Assembly (NCBI RefSeq): GCF_963853765.1
Contig: NC_088854.1
Span: 39,494,001 to 39,558,000, forward strand
DNA: 64,000 bases
DNA from: Magallana gigas
Taxonomy: Eukaryota
Direction: 5' to 3'
Below the pieces are notes generated by a model. That model was given only the letters and a program-made list of their open reading frames with translations, searched no databases and had not been told where the DNA came from. Position numbers and translations under genes: made by a program. Of this stretch, positions 4,677 to 55,172 are shown one piece after another; the first letter of the stretch is position 1, and each line of letters begins with the position of its first letter.

Positions 4677-6347
4677 TTGTTTGTCTGTTGATCTCTTTTC
4701 AACATATTCTTTATAAATATACAATTATCACTAAAAGGAGAGCAATAGACAAACATGCGCTGACTATGTCTAAAGTATGTAAAAAAGTGGGCGTCCTCAT
4801 TATCCTATGGAGATTCAAGAAAAAGCAATGACATCTACCAATGAAAACGACTTTGTTCTTTGTAAATATGAACTTAATATAATTATTATTACATGAAGTT
4901 GCAGTAAGGACTTAGGTCATTCCTACAATTAAAAGAAATCTGTCCATTTTTAATCTTTATTTTCCCGCATTTTTTTTTATCCGTAAGTGCAGGCATTTTT
5001 TTTTAGTATTTTTGCCTACATCTATGAATAGAGCTAATCCTTTTATTGGGATCAATATAGTCCAAAAATGGCCACGGTCATCGAGTCTTCTTACCACTGG
5101 GTCATACCAACGCCTCTATCTTTGTTGACATAGATCAATAAATAAAATCAAATGTCAACGATATCAATACTGCAATTACTGATACATTGATATTCTAGAC
5201 ATGAAGCGAAAGAATGCTGTGTTGTCAAATTTCAAATGAACAACGGTATCTTTTAAAAAATATAAACTTAAGCCTATCAAAAACATAATAATAACAGCAA
5301 AGAATGCGTGGAGCGTCCTGATGCAGGAATGATGTGTAGTCAATGTTTATTTTTTATATACCTTTTTTCAGCGAAGCCTTACATTGCCTTTACCAAGTAC
5401 AATAACGTTTGTCTTTATATCTGTGCATATGCTAACTGTTATGTTATATTATGCTTTGTTAAAAGTAATGATGATGAAGAAAAGTTGTAGTAATTTGTGT
5501 TTCTAAAAATTTGAGTAGAGAAACCAAATACCATATTTTTATGAATAACTAAGAAGTATTTTTATATGTCCCTGTCAACTGCAATCTGTTTTACATGTAT
5601 AAATAGTGTTCTTGTAAGAATCAAATAATTTAATAATTTAACCTTCTGCCGTTTATTTTATATCATAATATACAACTCTTTCATGTATTATTTTCATAAA
5701 TGAATACATACAGTTATCTACTTGGATTGATTCTTACATGAATGCTATTCTGTTGAAAACAAAAACTACGGTTTACGTAACAAAATAAACGACCACCTTT
5801 ACAAATCGAATCAACTAAAAAATTCATAATGTAAAATCTAACTTTTTTAATTTAAATGAAAGGAGGGGAAATCACGAAAACTTGATTGTTAAGATGACAT
5901 AAAAGCAGGTACTAGGCAATGAATCAAATAGTTTTAAAGTGGATTAGCATTTAGAATGCAAAACAGTGAACGAAACAAACAGCATACTTTATTAGAATCG
6001 TTGACAGTGTATGATCAGTTTTTATCAGGGTTACAAATCAACAAGACTTTCATTAATATTAAGCATTTGATTTAATTGCGTTGCATCGTCGGATACCGTA
6101 AAAGGTTTCTTGAATTTACATAATTATTTTGTTTAACAAGTTTGAACCATTTAAACAAACGTTCACGAAGGTGGATAGAGCAAAATCCGACGCTTCAACA
6201 TACAAGCATGCAATACTCTAATATTTTTAAACAACATTATTGTATTCCATCATTTCCCGTCAAATAACACTTAATTTTTTTTTACAGATATGAAGGTTAA
6301 GTATCATTTAAAGTGGAAAGATTTTCGCATATGGTTCTGAATTCGTC

Positions 6348-14094: not shown

Positions 14095-21900
<7,806 letters not shown>

Positions 21901-50054: not shown

Positions 50055-51564
50055 ATTGTAAAGTATATGTACATGTGTATTTAATTATAGAAATATTAAA
50101 TTTGAAAAAGTCCGAAGGGGGGAAATCATGAACTGTATTCGTGTGGATAAACCATTGCTGATAAATGCATGCAGTAAAATTGCAGTGATACATTTATGCT
50201 ATTAATTATAATACATACCAGGGGCTGGACAACGGCCACCGTCCCTCCAAAAAAAAATAACTCTAATATATTTATTATAATCTATATAAAAGGCGATATA
50301 TGATCATTGAAGCGGCGACTACGTGTACAACTTCTGGAGTCAAGGGAGCAAGGAGGTGTGAACTCTATATTGCTTACACTAGCGCCAAGTGGGGCTAACC
50401 CAGGAAGATACCCATAAATATGCCTTGTGTATGTTTGTATTAAATAAATTCATCTACGCAGTTATTGCAACTTTTCAGAAATCTTTATATAATTGTATGA
50501 AAATCAGTCGATTAGGGTACAATCAATACTCGTTTAACGTTATGCATGTGTTAAGAAACATATCAAATTGGTGAAAGAACTATAATATATATGATAAGGA
50601 CTGAAAATGCCACCTAATATTAAAAGATGATTTTATCTATTTTACAAATAAGTTTTTTACTATACATGTGAAGTTTTTATATAACTTTCATTTTGATCCA
50701 AAGCGGCTTTTCTAAAGGTTCATTGTGCGCAGGCTCGAACAAACAAGTATTTTCACTCAAGATTTGTCCATCCAAGACTAATACCTGACATAAAGAGTTT
50801 GCTTGTTCAAAGCACGCTCCATATTTCAACTTAAAAAAAGATCGGAGAAAAATGTCCACATTTGATTTATTTTTATTAAGTTCTAAATAAAACGTCAACT
50901 CAGCCAGCGAGTGAAATAAAATGAGCTAATTTGATGAAATATATATTTCATACCATAGACTCTTCACACTCTTGATACACCTGAAATGTTTTAAAAATGT
51001 TCAATCATCGTGGCCAAATTTAACTCTTATCATATACAACCCTTTGCCTTTTTTTTTATAACAACATAGTATTTTTCAGAAACATAGGTGTTATGTAAAT
51101 TAGATACCGGTATACCGGTATGATTAAACATTTTTTATCAGTATCACTTCCTTCCCCTTTTAGCCCCACCCATCTTTCAAAATATGCATTCCCTTCCCGA
51201 TCGAACCCCACCCCCTTTAAACAAAAAGGATTTAACTCCAAGCTCGCTACTTCTATTTACTTTTAGATTCGCCTCTCCAATATTGAATACACTTTCGACA
51301 CCCCTGCTAGAACAGGATTAGGCTAAATTGAAGTAAATTCCCTGCATTTTACATGTAGCTATTGAAATAAGCCCTCTTTTTGAATGGTTACATTGACACT
51401 AAAAGCTAAACAATGATTATTTGTGACCAATCTCTATCTTTACAACACATTTTCCCAGTATAGAGTACTCAACATGCCACCCGTTGTCATCAAATTATCG
51501 GGTAGTTAGAGTATTTGCCTCGTTTTAGCTCAGACCTGTAGTCGTGTTTACAAGTACATGTATT

Positions 51565-53096
51565 ATGGCGAAGTCCGCAGAAGTAACACTGGCGGAGATT
51601 AAACTCTTTAAACATGATGGAGGAACTACAAATGGAGCGGACATATTACCTTCAGGACCAATGAAATATTCTCTTCTTGTATTCCTTCGGAATTTTGCAT
51701 GAATAGGGTGGTAAGTTGTATAACTCGCGTCGAAATCATTTTCTAACTTGAGTTATCGTTCTCTCGTCATTACGCAATATCTCTTAAAGCTCAGTACAGT
51801 GTATGTTCAAAAATAGTTGACAGGGTTGGGTCGAAATGTTTCATTTAAAAAATTACTCTAAAAATAAAGTTTTAATTAGTTTCACGAAGTTGATTAAAAT
51901 TTGATGTGTTTATTCTTTTTTCATGTATGTTCTTTTATGTTTCGTTGATATGAAATGAAGGTATTTTTGAGATATTCATCATTACTGTATAATATATAAA
52001 TTCATTTTACTCCTGGTATGCTCATTGCAATTGGTTTAAAAATGGATTGATTTGTGTCCATATATTTCAGTCAGCTGAAAATGCAGGCCTTATCTCCTTT
52101 AGCGGACAAGCTTAAGGAGCATCACACACGGCTTGTGTTTGTCGGCTCGTCCACTGTGGACCAGATGGAGGAATTTATGCGCAGTCCAACGGTCCTTATG
52201 TCTGGCGAACTATACTCGGACCCCACTACTTCCCTTTACAAAACATTCCACATGAAGAGAGGGCGATTTCGCTCACTTGTCATGCCGATTTGGAACAGCG
52301 TGTCGAGATATGGATGGAGCGGGGCTGTGGAAGGTAAGCGAAAGTACATCTTTTTCACTTATAATTGGCATGTATTTGCAAACATCGTGGTATACTATCA
52401 TATGTTGGTTGATGACTACAACTTTAAATGCTGCAGTTTATTCGGGAAAAAACCCACAAGGAAACAATATAAAAAAAACGCAGATCAAAACTTTTTAAGA
52501 CTTTTTTGTCATTTATAAATCTACATGTACCATATGATATTCATTAGTCCTGCAAATCTGTGATTAAATATCTGTGTTTTAAGCTCAGATATGGAAACCT
52601 CAGAGGCAGCGAACGGTGTTAGATTGCTATACATGTATATAGAATTGCGTTATATTTTCAGGAGTAAAACTGGGTTTAGAAACATCGCACCTTGCAGGGG
52701 ACTCTTGGATACAAGGGGGTACTATTTTATTGGACCAAGATGGAACTATTTTGTATCAGGTACAGTGTATTAGAAATGTTTAAACAGACATCAATTCTTG
52801 CTACTAGCTCTTTATAGTAAATTGCGTGTTTTGAAATTGTTGTTTCATTGCAATGACAATAATCACGTGGTGCTTCGCGATTATTGGCTCTGGGCCAGCA
52901 GTTTTAAAAAAATTATGAACATGTATGAATTTGCAATATGCATGATATACTTTTTTTTTAGCACCAGGAAGAGCACCCTGCTGACTGGCCCGATATGACC
53001 GAGGTATTACGAATGGTTGGCTTCACTGAAGTACCTGTGGATTACGATAGAGCTGTTTCCGAATGGATGCATGCAAGACAAAACGCTCGGAAATAG
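51565..53096 (+). CDS. Selenoprotein of the AhpC/TSA-2 (PRXL2 / SelU-SelL) thioredoxin-fold family, most like PRXL2C/AAED1; 213 aa with Sec46 (UxxC)
   Basis: Exons 51565-51710, 52071-52333, 52662-52759, 52962-53096 (TAG); 642 nt; phases 2, 1, 0. In-frame TGA at 51700-51702 in LVFLRNFA-U-IG-C. Downstream family motifs: ELYSDPTTSLYKTFHMKRG, GDSWIQGGTILLDQDG, HQEEHPADWPDMTEVLRMVG. SECIS present in the 3' UTR. Confidence 0.92.
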
Positions 53097-53135
53097 CACA
53101 GCTAGATGATGAATAAAGTGTTTATTTGTTGTCTG

Positions 53136-53207
53136 ATGGTTAGATGAAATCATGACGAACTTTGTGTTAAATGCTTATACAAGCGAACCGAAGTTCTGAG
53201 CTAACAT
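53136..53207 (+). promoter_or_regulatory. Type II eukaryotic SECIS element
   Basis: Helix I GTTAG/CTAAC; core ATGAC...TGAG (tandem GA); helix II GAACTTTG(T)GTT/AACCGAAGTTC (11 bp plus one bulge); apical AAA (53169-53171); mini-helix TGCTT-ATAC-AAGCG. Folded by eye. Confidence 0.9.
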
Positions 53208-54728
53208 TATCCAACACACAGACACATATGAACTTTTATTTTCATTTTATCAAAGCAATTTTTTTGTGGTGTTGATTTCACATGTTATCAACCAGTCATT
53301 TAACTTTATAGAATCATGTTCATAATATAATATTTACATTAATTTGTACAAATTCTACAAATATCCACTATTTTATACATTTTAACTTTGAAATTAAAAC
53401 GGTTTTAAATTGATCTGTTACATGTATTTCATTCTGCATGTCAAGTGTTCAAAATGAACGAAGAAAACACCATACATTTAATCGTAGGGCTGTTTTTAGT
53501 ATGATGTAGTTATAAGATTGCAAAAAAATATTACACCGAAGACTGTCTTGATTTTTCAGAAATTTCAAAAACTATATATACCACTACAAAATAGTCCCCA
53601 ATATTGAATTTGTATTTTTAACTTTGACGACATTGCAATCCCCATATTAACAGGTTTTTAAGACGAGAGACCATGGGATTCAGATAGTATAATGTATTGA
53701 AATTACAATAAAACACAGAATGCATGCATGTAGTTGCTGTATATTATTCCATATAGATAAGTCGGGTGCGATCATATGTTGTATGAACACCGCTCTATAT
53801 ATTTTTCCTCCATAGAGTCAACAAAAATAAGTGACAGGTGCAAACTAAATGTATACCAGCATACTCTGATTGTTCTAAACACAGTATTAATAATAATGTA
53901 TTTAAGAAGGAATCGGGAATTACTCTTATTATTATAATTATAAAAAGAGAAACATTATATATTTCAAAGTGGTTCATTCGGTAGACATTGCCGTGTCAAT
54001 CCGGAGGTTTTCTTGCTTCATTTTTTAAGATCTAAATTATGACATTTTCAGAAACAGTTTTGTACATGTAACAACTGAAGCAACCGTGTCTCATTATTTT
54101 CAACTATGACAGCCAGTTGTTGCATGAATTTTCAGATAACTTTGAAACTTAAGTTAATATTACTTTTTGGCGTCCGTTTTGAAAAATTTCCAACGTTATA
54201 CATAATTTTATCGATAATTAATTCTTTTTCTGTAATTTCATAGGTTTGTGTTGGTAAAAAAAACAAAAATTATTTTTCCAATTTAAATTTGAGGTTGAGA
54301 CAGGCCCATCACGACTGACCGAAAAAAAGAGACACATGTGCATGTTTATTGACCCAGAGGACGAGACCACTACCCTCCCTAGTTATACCGTCTCGCTAAT
54401 CTAGTTCCAATGATATGCATTGGGACTGATATTTTAAGAGGTATTTGATACTATGAGCTATGTAGCAACCTCTAATGATACAACGTCCACTAATGATATA
54501 ATGTTTCATTAGTGGTCAGGATGTTGACCACTAATGATATAATTTTATCATTAACGAACAACCTAACCGTCCGCTAATGATATAATTTCAGATTTGTATC
54601 ATTAGCGGTCAAAAACCGTAACCTCTAATGATATGGAAAAAAACTGAGAAATAAGTACTACCTTGACCACTAATGATATACATTTGCACACATTTTCAAT
54701 TGCATTAGTGGATGGATTTGAAACATTT

Positions 54729-54872
54729 NNNNNNNNNNNNNNNNNNNNNNNNNNNNNNNNNNNNNNNNNNNNNNNNNNNNNNNNNNNNNNNNNNNNNNNN
54801 NNNNNNNNNNNNNNNNNNNNNNNNNNNNNNNNNNNNNNNNNNNNNNNNNNNNNNNNNNNNNNNNNNNNNNNN
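54729..54872. other. Assembly gap (N run)
   Basis: 144 N. Confidence 1.
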
Positions 54873-55001: not shown

Positions 55002-55172
55002 NNNNNNNNNNNNNNNNNNNNNNNNNNNNNNNNNNNNNNNNNNNNNNNNNNNNNNNNNNNNNNNNNNNNNNNNNNNNNNNNNNNNNNNNNNNNNNNNNNN
55101 NNNNNNNNNNNNNNNNNNNNNNNNNNNNNNNNNNNNNNNNNNNNNNNNNNNNNNNNNNNNNNNNNNNNNNNN
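55002..55172. other. Assembly gap (N run)
   Basis: 171 N. Confidence 1.

What the first reader, a model, noticed from the sequence alone, without database searches (positions are those of the whole stretch)
51565..53207. Hidden selenoprotein: in-frame UGA in a UxxC motif of a PRXL2C/SelU-type thioredoxin-fold protein
Seen: exon 1 reads M-A-K-S...LVFLRNFA-TGA-ATA-GGG-TG|T, so the UGA sits exactly where the first Cys of the family CxxC redox motif lies. The frame continues cleanly through three more exons (213 aa), and a SECIS follows the true TAG. Established: Sec is encoded by UGA plus a SECIS. AhpC/TSA-2 proteins include SelU (UxxC in some lineages), PRXL2C/AAED1 (CxxC in vertebrates) and SelL (UxxU). 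Inference: motifs HMKRG, QGGT-LL and VL-MVG resemble PRXL2C/AAED1 most, so this may be a Sec-containing member of a subfamily that uses Cys in vertebrates, or a separate molluscan lineage. Automated annotation would probably truncate it or start it in exon 2, as the ORF track does.
Basis: partly seen in the sequence, partly recalled or inferred. Interest (0 to 1): 0.9.

Follow-up and report, generated by a model that had tools for sequence, protein, structure and literature searches.

The report
Oyster SelU-family selenoprotein gene
This is a real, expressed four-exon oyster gene for a small thioredoxin-fold redox protein whose in-frame UGA very probably encodes selenocysteine; the kind (selenoprotein U / PRXL2 family) is well known, but this copy sits on a fourth branch of the family that public annotation routinely cuts short.

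Summary
Exons 51565-51710, 52071-52333, 52662-52759 and 52962-53096 give a 213-codon frame with one in-frame TGA (51700-51702) in the motif FA-U-IGC. RNA contigs from three studies show all three junctions and the unchanged TGA.

A type II SECIS-like hairpin lies 47 nt after the TAG, at 53143-53211. It scores below Rfam's cut-off.

In seven relatives the same column is TGA: a sibling oyster, a mussel, a gastropod and four unidentified metagenome or metatranscriptome sequences. The protein is conserved on both sides of it. The six relatives other than the mussel, plus the C. virginica orthologue (whose first exon was not recovered), carry a SECIS-like element in the 3'UTR; the mussel gave no hit. 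Two relatives have Cys at the column. The genome has tRNA-Sec.

The subfamily call is not supported. This genome has separate orthologues of all three named subfamilies:
- PRXL2C: Cys form, 40% identical to the human protein, against 25% for this gene.
- PRXL2B: Sec form.
- PRXL2A: Sec form.

The window gene belongs to a fourth clade (support 93/92).

Sec-containing SelU genes in molluscs were reported in 2012, so this is a new member of a known kind. Public records of its orthologues are all cut off at the UGA.

The parts
51466..51564 (+). 5' untranslated part of exon 1 (minimum extent)
   Evidence: The RNA contig of run X6 starts at 51466, and those of X3 and X7 at 51546 and 51561. The true transcription start was not determined.
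51565..51710 (+). Coding exon 1: Met1 to the first two bases of Cys49, including the Sec codon
   Evidence: Gene model. The donor G|GTAAGT and the joint 51709/10 to 52070/71 are seen in 3 contig runs and 1 raw read.
51700..51702 (+). In-frame TGA, codon 46, read as selenocysteine (motif FA-U-IGC)
   Evidence: Unchanged in RNA contigs of three studies. The same column is TGA in seven other sequences (L005, L006, L007, L008, L010/L011, L030, L031), with conserved protein on both sides. It is Cys in P0011 and P0014.
52071..52333 (+). Coding exon 2, core of the AhpC-TSA_2 domain
   Evidence: Pfam PF13911 at E 8.6e-11. Joints are in RNA.
52662..52759 (+). Coding exon 3, with the conserved HLAGDSWIQGG stretch
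   Evidence: Pfam PF13911 at E 0.0025. Joints are in RNA.
52962..53096 (+). Coding part of exon 4, ending in TAG at 53094-53096
   Evidence: The joint 52757/59 to 52960/62 is seen in the X7 and X3 contigs.
53143..53211 (+). SECIS element, form 2: helix 1, AUGA 53152-55, a 12-column helix 2 stack (11 pairs, one unpaired base), AAA bulge 53169-71, mini-stem, GA 53198-99
   Evidence: Rfam SECIS_1 scores 18.8 bits, below the cut-off of 35. The fold z-score is -3.7. It is the only hit of my SECIS scanner in the 3' region, against a background of 0.031 per kb per strand. C. virginica has an alignable element at the same place.
53097..53400 (+). 3' untranslated region (runs on beyond 53400; end not determined)
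   Evidence: RNA contigs of X7, X3 and X6 run to the end of the stretch laid.

Best explanation
The locus is a functional selenoprotein gene of the selenoprotein U / peroxiredoxin-like 2 (AhpC-TSA_2) family.

Its mRNA carries UGA at codon 46. About 560 nt downstream, 47 nt past the TAG stop, the 3'UTR carries a form-2 SECIS hairpin. I infer that the SECIS recruits SBP2, eEFSec and Sec-tRNA(Sec), so that UGA is read as selenocysteine and a 213-residue cytosolic thioredoxin-fold protein is made.

Sec sits where the family's first redox Cys lies, at the start of helix alpha-1, three residues before the resolving Cys (U-I-G-C). The protein most likely works as a thiol/selenol oxidoreductase that cycles through a selenenylsulfide. 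Its substrate is unknown.

It is not the orthologue of vertebrate PRXL2A, PRXL2B or PRXL2C. It belongs to a fourth, old paralogue clade found in bivalves, gastropods and unidentified or protist eukaryotes. Every full-length member I could read in that clade has Sec.

Shown: gene structure, expression, conservation of the UGA, presence of SECIS-like elements, family membership, and paralogy. Inferred: actual Sec insertion, the catalytic cycle, and absence of the clade from vertebrates.
For: 1. Gene model and RNA. There are four GT..AG exons and one internal TGA. All joints and the TGA are seen in RNA contigs of three studies plus a raw polyA read whose orientation fits a + strand RNA.

2. Comparative signature of Sec.
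- Transcripts or genes from a sibling oyster (L005), a gastropod (L006), a marine metatranscriptome (L007), two intronless genomic contigs (L008, L031), another metatranscriptome (L010/L011) and Mytilus trossulus (L030) all have TGA at the same column.
- The surrounding consensus is [LV]RN[FYL]A-U-[IVL][AG]C, and the reading frame is conserved upstream of the TGA.
- Mytilus even shares the split-codon intron, TG|GTAAGT.
- Relatives P0011 and P0014 have Cys at the column.

3. SECIS.
- The window element has every consensus feature.
- My scanner finds exactly one such element in the 3' region of six of the seven TGA-bearing relatives and of C. virginica (L029), with no hit in Mytilus. Background in the window is 0.031 per kb per strand.
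- The L008 element reaches 33.9 bits, E 2.4e-4, with Rfam SECIS_1.
- Across oyster species 83% of cells pair in the proposed structure, against 33-56% when partners are slid.

4. Sec machinery. tRNA-Sec scores 77.3 bits, and ARAGORN calls it tRNA-SeC(tca).

5. Family. PF13911. The only PDB relative is prostamide/PGF synthase (PRXL2B) at E 2.5e-9, aligned from the Cys of the motif onward. The AF2 model (pLDDT 79.6) hits PRXL2C, PRXL2B and PRXL2A.

6. Paralogy.
- The C7 gene product P0128 is 40% identical to human PRXL2C.
- A single 45-residue exon of the C3 gene scores 35.5 bits to PRXL2B, against 40.5 bits for 167 residues of this gene.
- The C4 gene groups with named PRXL2A proteins.
- In the tree the window clade has support 93/92, A 100/99, C 100/100, and joining the window clade to the B-type gene alone gives p-AU 0.028.
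Against: - No direct evidence that selenium is inserted: no proteomics, ribosome profiling or labelling.
- The Rfam SECIS_1 score of the window element is well below the gathering score (18.8 against 35). The C. virginica element scores 19.5.
- No compensatory double changes were seen in the SECIS, because only four alignable sequences were available.
- The common allele in the RNA runs has T>A at 53194, which puts an A.A mismatch in helix 2.
- No SECIS passed my scanner in the Mytilus 3' region.
- The trees hold no vertebrate PRXL2B or PRXL2C sequences, because I could not fetch them. Their place is inferred through the oyster orthologues, and the B-type is a single hand-assembled long branch.
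- Deep branching is unresolved: window clade plus C gives p-AU 0.34, and window clade plus A plus B gives 0.47.
- The taxonomy of the non-mollusc members is unknown.
Confidence: 0.86

Rival explanations
1. It is the oyster orthologue of vertebrate PRXL2C/AAED1 (SELENOU2) that has kept Sec.
For: Human PRXL2C is nominally the top Foldseek Swiss-Prot hit (25% identity, E 2.1e-4). The nearest named Atlas cluster is 'C9orf21 protein'. NCBI names the Mytilus and Pomacea orthologues PRXL2C or AAED1. A sister relation of this clade to the C clade is not rejected (p-AU 0.34).
Against: The same genome has another gene (C7; product P0128, motif CFIC) that is 40% identical to human PRXL2C over 228 aligned residues (E 1.7e-21). 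Its Saccostrea counterpart is named PRXL2C, while the Saccostrea counterpart of the window gene is left uncharacterised. PRXL2B scores almost the same as PRXL2C against the window gene (24%, E 3.7e-4). The C clade is closed at 100/100 without it.
Confidence: 0.04
2. It is a diverged extra copy of the PRXL2B / prostamide-PGF synthase type. That type is the 'SelU3' reported as a selenoprotein in Lottia, Capitella and Nematostella in 2012.
For: PRXL2B is the only PDB relative (E 2.5e-9). C. virginica annotation calls the orthologue 'prostamide/prostaglandin F synthase-like'. Jiang et al. list one Sec SelU3 in a mollusc.
Against: A much better PRXL2B orthologue lies on C3: its 45-residue exon scores 35.5 bits without gaps, and it has its own TGA and SECIS-like element. 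Joining the window clade to that gene alone is disfavoured (lnL -14.5, p-AU 0.028). PRXL2A is closer to PRXL2B (62 bits) than the window gene is (40 bits).
Confidence: 0.05
3. The UGA is a genuine stop. The mRNA gives a 45-residue peptide and/or a 161-residue protein started at Met53, without the redox motif, as public annotation implies.
For: Database ORFs of that shape exist in many samples (P0017 has 73 members). The SECIS score in Rfam is below threshold. There are no protein-level data.
Against: The frame upstream of the TGA is conserved as protein from molluscs to distant eukaryotes. The TGA itself is kept at one column in seven other sequences, and its replacement where seen is Cys. The residues xxC after it are conserved, and a SECIS-like element accompanies the gene in nearly every case. 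Several relatives lack a Met near the start of the truncated ORF, so gene callers used GTG or TTG right after the TGA.
Confidence: 0.03
4. It is an assembly or sequencing artefact, or a decaying pseudogene.
For: None beyond the presence of a stop codon in the frame.
Against: The same TGA appears in RNA contigs of three studies and in DNA-type runs holding 74-85% of the words. There are clean splice sites, steady expression and no other frame defect.
Confidence: 0.01

Closest known systems
Selenoprotein U family sensu lato (SELENOU1/PRXL2A, SELENOU2/PRXL2C, SELENOU3/PRXL2B; Pfam AhpC-TSA_2, PF13911)
   Same: Same Pfam domain and same thioredoxin-type fold. The redox motif U/CxxC sits at the same place. 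It has a eukaryotic form-2 SECIS in the 3'UTR. Sec/Cys interchange occurs among relatives.
   Different: It falls outside the three named subfamilies in my trees. It is only 20-25% identical to the human proteins. It has its own flanking signature, RN[FY]A-U-x[AG]C-Q, where the oyster paralogues read RRPG-U-SMC (A), RRFG-U-PFC (B) and RHFL-C-FIC (C).
Invertebrate Sec-containing SelU2/SelU3 genes of Jiang et al. 2012 (PMC3473315), e.g. Lg.SelU3 of the limpet Lottia gigantea
   Same: A mollusc SelU-family gene with UGA in the redox motif and a SECIS, in a subfamily that vertebrates do not use with Sec.
   Different: I could not see their sequences. By their description (prostamide/PGF-synthase-like), the oyster gene that fits their SelU3 is the C3 gene, not this one. 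Whether their data set held a member of this clade is unknown.
Prostamide/prostaglandin F synthase (PRXL2B), PDB 9us9/9usa
   Same: It is the only solved relative. The alignment runs from the motif Cys to near the C-terminus at E 2.5e-9, with shared GELY.D...LYK and GD....GG stretches.
   Different: About 24% identity. The oyster has its own closer orthologue on C3. No evidence links the window protein to prostaglandin chemistry.
Selenoprotein L (UxxU)
   Different: The window gene has one Sec and a Cys (UxxC), not two Sec. It appeared in no search result here, and membership was not tested further.

Membership tests
Eukaryotic selenoprotein gene | In-frame UGA at a position conserved as UGA or Cys in homologues, with coding conservation on both sides | tested here: met
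   TGA at the same column in L005, L006, L007, L008, L010/L011, L030 and L031. Cys in P0011 and P0014. The upstream frame is conserved.
Eukaryotic selenoprotein gene | SECIS element in the 3'UTR (AUGA / AA / GA core, helix 1 and helix 2) | tested here: inconclusive
   All consensus features are present and the fold z-score is -3.7. It is the sole scanner hit in the 3' region, and it is conserved in C. virginica. Rfam SECIS_1 gives only 18.8 bits against a cut-off of 35, and no compensatory changes were seen. SECISearch3 was not available.
Eukaryotic selenoprotein gene | Host has the Sec machinery | tested here: met
   tRNA-Sec at 77.3 bits, called tRNA-SeC(tca) by ARAGORN. Two paralogues with TGA plus SECIS-like elements exist. 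SBP2, eEFSec and SPS2 were not searched.
Eukaryotic selenoprotein gene | Selenium actually incorporated at the UGA | not testable with these tools
   Needs 75Se labelling, mass spectrometry or ribosome profiling.
SelU / PRXL2 (AhpC-TSA_2) | PF13911 domain above the curated cut-off | tested here: met
   Exon 2 alone scores 42.7 bits against a cut-off of 27.
SelU / PRXL2 (AhpC-TSA_2) | U/CxxC motif at the N-terminus of helix alpha-1 of a thioredoxin-like fold | tested here: met
   The motif is U-I-G-C. The model of the part after Sec starts with helix 2-19. The motif Cys aligns to Cys47 of PRXL2B in 9us9.
PRXL2C / AAED1 (SELENOU2) orthogroup | Closest relative in this genome of vertebrate PRXL2C | tested here: not met
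   The C7 gene product P0128 is 40% identical at E 1.7e-21. The window gene is 25% identical at E 2.1e-4. The C clade is closed at 100/100 without it.
PRXL2B / prostamide-PGF synthase (SELENOU3) orthogroup | Closest relative in this genome of vertebrate PRXL2B | tested here: not met
   A 45-residue exon of the C3 gene scores 35.5 bits, gapless. 167 residues of the window gene score 40.5 bits. The AU test gives p 0.028 against joining them alone.
PRXL2A (SELENOU1) orthogroup | Groups with named PRXL2A proteins | tested here: not met
   The A clade is 100/99 and contains the C4 gene, not the window gene. Foldseek to PRXL2A gives only E 8.5e-2.

The most novel reading that the evidence does not exclude
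The window gene represents a fourth, ancient subfamily of the SelU/PRXL2 family (a 'SELENOU4'). It is distinct from SELENOU1, 2 and 3. It is present from protists to molluscs and absent from vertebrates, and it is essentially always Sec-containing. It has escaped notice because every public gene model is truncated at the UGA and is then named after whichever vertebrate paralogue scores best.
Probability: 0.4. Interest if true: 0.5.

Novelty: new member of a known kind. Interest (0 to 1): 0.35.

Why it matters
It adds one well-supported gene to a bivalve selenoproteome. It also shows a systematic annotation fault: RefSeq and UniProt entries of the orthologues in Crassostrea virginica, Saccostrea, Mytilus, Littorina and Pomacea all lack the N-terminal strand and the catalytic Sec. 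Any functional or evolutionary inference from those entries is therefore wrong.

This one oyster genome carries four SelU/PRXL2 paralogues, three of them with Sec. That suggests the family's history, currently told as three subfamilies with Sec mostly in SELENOU1, is richer outside vertebrates. For selenium biology in aquatic animals this is a modest but concrete refinement. It does not change any principle.

Tried and rejected
- Searching with exon 2 alone found only the gene itself in its own genome and only 15 library hits, most of them truncated.
- The first word-indexed search gave only near-identical Logan ORFs.
- I could not bring vertebrate PRXL2B or PRXL2C sequences into the session. 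The third protein search, seeded with exon pieces of the paralogues, returned mollusc PRXL2C and many PRXL2A proteins but no vertebrate B or C. The trees therefore rest on the oyster orthologues as stand-ins.
- Three rows I first labelled bacterial (P0141, P0148, P0149) turned out to be truncated PRXL2A-type proteins and were relabelled.
- MAFFT/RNAalifold could not align the SECIS elements of distant orthologues and missed helix 2 even among oysters. I therefore counted pairs on a structure I supplied.
- Rfam found no SECIS at E<10 in the pooled transcript loci.
- The other three hits of my SECIS scanner in the window (3024, 16057, 16383) do not fold as SECIS, and two of them are copies of one repeat.
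- The paper on the Pacific oyster selenoproteome (Baclaocos et al. 2019) is not held, so I could not check whether this very gene is among its 32.
- The Atlas shape search added nothing.
- Complex prediction was not used: no binding claim is made.

Full report
**Observation.**
- An ATG at 51565 opens exon 1, which ends ...GCA TGA ATA GGG TG|GTAAGT.
- Exon 2 begins with T at 52071, completing a Cys codon, so the motif is U-I-G-C.
- With exons 52071-52333, 52662-52759 and 52962-53096, all GT..AG, the frame is 642 nt, or 213 codons.
- There is one internal stop, TGA at 51700-51702, and the frame ends in TAG at 53094-53096.

**RNA evidence.**
Public runs hold 30-34% of the sampled words of the 2-kb stretch, about what the exons make up. 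I laid four runs on it.
- RNA contigs of three different studies show exactly the three predicted joints and no others. A raw polyA read shows the first two.
- Contigs cover 51700-51702, and no difference is listed there.
- The raw reads lie with the first mate on the minus strand. In the usual stranded libraries that means a plus-strand RNA.
- The transcript continues past 53400.

Assembly error, pseudogene decay and splicing around the TGA are thus excluded.

**Family.**
- Exon 2 alone matches Pfam AhpC-TSA_2 (PF13911) at 42.7 bits, and exon 3 matches weakly.
- The only relative with a solved structure is prostamide/prostaglandin F synthase, PRXL2B (9us9). It matches at E 2.5e-9, and the alignment starts at the motif's Cys.
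- An AlphaFold model of the part after Sec (pLDDT 79.6) begins with a long helix, as expected for the helix that carries a CxxC motif in a thioredoxin fold.

**Is the UGA read as Sec?**
The strongest evidence is comparative.

Database relatives are almost all cut short. Some start at the exon 2 Met. Others start with a GTG, TTG or ATG right after the stop.

I fetched the DNA behind several of them and read the frame upstream. The following all have TGA at the same column:
- a sibling oyster transcript (L005)
- a gastropod transcript (L006)
- a marine metatranscriptome contig (L007)
- two intronless genomic contigs (L008, L031)
- another metatranscriptome pair (L010/L011)
- the Mytilus trossulus genome (L030)

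The signature around it is [LV]RN[FYL]A-U-[IVL][AG]C, and the protein is conserved for some 10-45 residues upstream. Mytilus also shares the intron that splits the Cys codon. Two relatives (P0011, P0014) have Cys at the column. This is the classical signature of a Sec codon. A true stop would not preserve the upstream frame over such distances.

**SECIS.**
The hairpin at 53143-53211 has these parts:
- helix 1
- an internal loop with AUGA (53152-55) facing GA (53198-99)
- a 12-column helix 2 (11 pairs and one unpaired base)
- an AAA bulge (53169-71) and a mini-stem, which together make it a form 2 element

Its strength is mixed.
- Rfam's SECIS_1 model gives only 18.8 bits against a cut-off of 35, so that match is weak alone.
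- A simple scanner I wrote for the core features finds it as the only hit in the 3' region. Background in the window is 4 hits in 128 kb of both strands. The other three do not fold as SECIS.
- The same scanner finds exactly one element in the 3' region of L005, L006, L007, L008, L010/L011, L031 and both C. virginica copies. It finds none in Mytilus.
- The L008 element reaches 33.9 bits, E 2.4e-4, in Rfam.
- Among four oyster sequences, 83% of cells pair in the proposed structure, against 33-56% with slid partners. No double compensatory change is seen.
- The allele common in the RNA runs has T>A at 53194, which gives an A.A mismatch in helix 2.

The genome has a tRNA-Sec at 77.3 bits, called tRNA-SeC(tca) by ARAGORN.

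**Which subfamily?**
Current nomenclature is SELENOU1 = PRXL2A, SELENOU2 = PRXL2C and SELENOU3 = PRXL2B (PMC13134290).

Foldseek of the model against Swiss-Prot puts human PRXL2C (25%, E 2.1e-4) and PRXL2B (24%, E 3.7e-4) level, with PRXL2A far behind.

The same genome, however, holds three more family genes.
- **C7 (minus strand):** its product P0128 has the motif C-F-I-C. It is 40% identical to human PRXL2C over 228 residues (E 1.7e-21).
- **C3:** reads LRRFG-U(TGA)-PFC. Its next 45 residues align without gaps to PRXL2B at 35.5 bits, and a SECIS-like element follows about 420 nt after the stop.
- **C4:** reads RRPG-U(TGA)-SMC-RE. It groups with named PRXL2A proteins and also has a SECIS-like element.

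So all three named subfamilies already have their oyster orthologue, and the window gene is a fourth paralogue.

In maximum-likelihood trees:
- The window gene and its 16 relatives form one group (93/92).
- The A group is supported at 100/99 and the C group at 100/100.
- The C3 gene joins A (95/94 in the first tree).
- Joining the window clade to the C3 gene alone is disfavoured (p-AU 0.028).
- A sister relation to C (p 0.34) or to A+B (p 0.47) cannot be told apart.

Caveats:
- No vertebrate PRXL2B or PRXL2C sequences could be brought into the tree.
- The B-type row is one hand-assembled long branch.
- I left out P0014 and P0101 as long branches in the second tree.

**Range of the clade.**
- Named members come from Crassostrea virginica, Saccostrea, Mytilus, Littorina, Pomacea, Babylonia and Batillaria.
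- Further members come from marine and other metatranscriptomes, from a 2.4-Mb contig of an unidentified eukaryote in which the gene has no introns, and from two EukProt entries.
- Many of these carry a C-terminal hydrophobic tail that the mollusc proteins lack.

I did not find a vertebrate member, but I could not test for one properly.

**What is known.**
- Jiang et al. 2012 (PMC3473315) reported more than ten Sec-containing SelU genes in six invertebrates. These included SelU3 in the limpet Lottia, Capitella and Nematostella, and SelU2 in Trichoplax.
- SELENOU is among the most widespread Sec proteins in algae (PMC7539508).
- The Pacific oyster selenoproteome was put at 32 genes (Baclaocos et al. 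2019, as cited in PMC8557442). That paper is not held, so I cannot say whether this locus is on its list.
- A 2026 vertebrate-centred study finds Sec only in the SELENOU1 branch and speaks of three subfamilies.
- I found no mention of a fourth.

**Earlier notes of this scan.**
They report SelJ and MsrA selenoprotein genes elsewhere in this genome. I did not test them. They agree with an active Sec system.

**Verdict.**
This is a genuine selenoprotein gene of the SelU/PRXL2 family, correctly spotted. The PRXL2C label is wrong, and the alternative of a separate lineage is right but too narrow. The kind is known, so I class it as a new member of a known kind. The added points are a possible unrecognised fourth subfamily and a systematic truncation in public annotation.

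Noticed in passing
L012 (G000:C4:52124000-52132000), + strand; Sec codon at L012 2838-2840; SECIS-like element at 5352-5393: The SelU1/PRXL2A-type paralogue of the same genome also has TGA in its redox motif (RRPG-U-SMC-RE), with a SECIS-like hairpin about 1 kb after the stop. The database ORF P0129 starts at the Met inside the motif, so it too is truncated. The limpet Patella has Cys here (P0138).
   Followed up: partly
L018 1450-1722 (-) and L020 (G000:C3:41161000-41172810), minus strand: A PRXL2B / prostamide-PGF-synthase-type gene with TGA in LRRFG-U-PFC. It has four exons by my hand model and a SECIS-like element about 420 nt after the stop. The PF13911 scan of the genome missed it; a search with a vertebrate PRXL2A protein found it. 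It is probably the counterpart of the 'SelU3' selenoprotein reported in Lottia.
   Followed up: partly
L013 (G000:C7:25952000-25961999), minus strand: The true PRXL2C/AAED1 orthologue. It is a Cys form (C-F-I-C), and its full product P0128 (231 aa) is 40% identical to human PRXL2C.
   Followed up: yes
L029 (Crassostrea virginica CM130313.1, 3863946-3872655): C. virginica appears to have two tandem copies of the orthologue, about 3 kb apart, each followed by a nearly identical SECIS-like element (1774-1818 and 4747-4791). Exon 1 with the TGA was not found within the fetched stretch.
   Followed up: partly
window 53125, 53194, 53201: All three RNA contig runs carry T>C, T>A and C>T here relative to the assembly. 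The change at 53194 makes an A.A mismatch in SECIS helix 2 and weakens the predicted fold from -26.4 to -23.0 kcal/mol. It could be a natural allele affecting Sec insertion efficiency.
   Followed up: partly
L008 4001-4564, L031 4001-4582, L010 194-781: Non-mollusc members of the clade are intronless (L008, L031) and end in a hydrophobic, tail-anchor-like segment that the mollusc proteins lack. In L008 and L031 the SECIS starts only 11-22 nt after the stop. The host organisms are unidentified, and ankyrin-repeat genes lie nearby.
   Followed up: no
P0011 (141 aa) versus P0042 / L031: P0011 is a close relative of the Sec-containing L031 gene but has Cys (YA-C-VSC), several odd substitutions and an early end. 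It is either a Sec-to-Cys paralogue or a decaying copy.
   Followed up: no
L021 1501-1587 and 2681-2766 (G000:C3:53009624-53012709): Two tRNA-SeC(tca) genes lie about 1.1 kb apart. Only the first was reported by the Rfam search, at 77.3 bits.
   Followed up: no
window 16040-16160 and 16366-16490: Two copies of a repeat (local alignment score 100 of 120) lie about 330 nt apart. Both tripped my SECIS scanner but do not fold as SECIS.
   Followed up: partly
window 54729-54872 and 55002-55172: Two runs of N lie downstream of the gene. The end of the 3'UTR was not determined.
   Followed up: no
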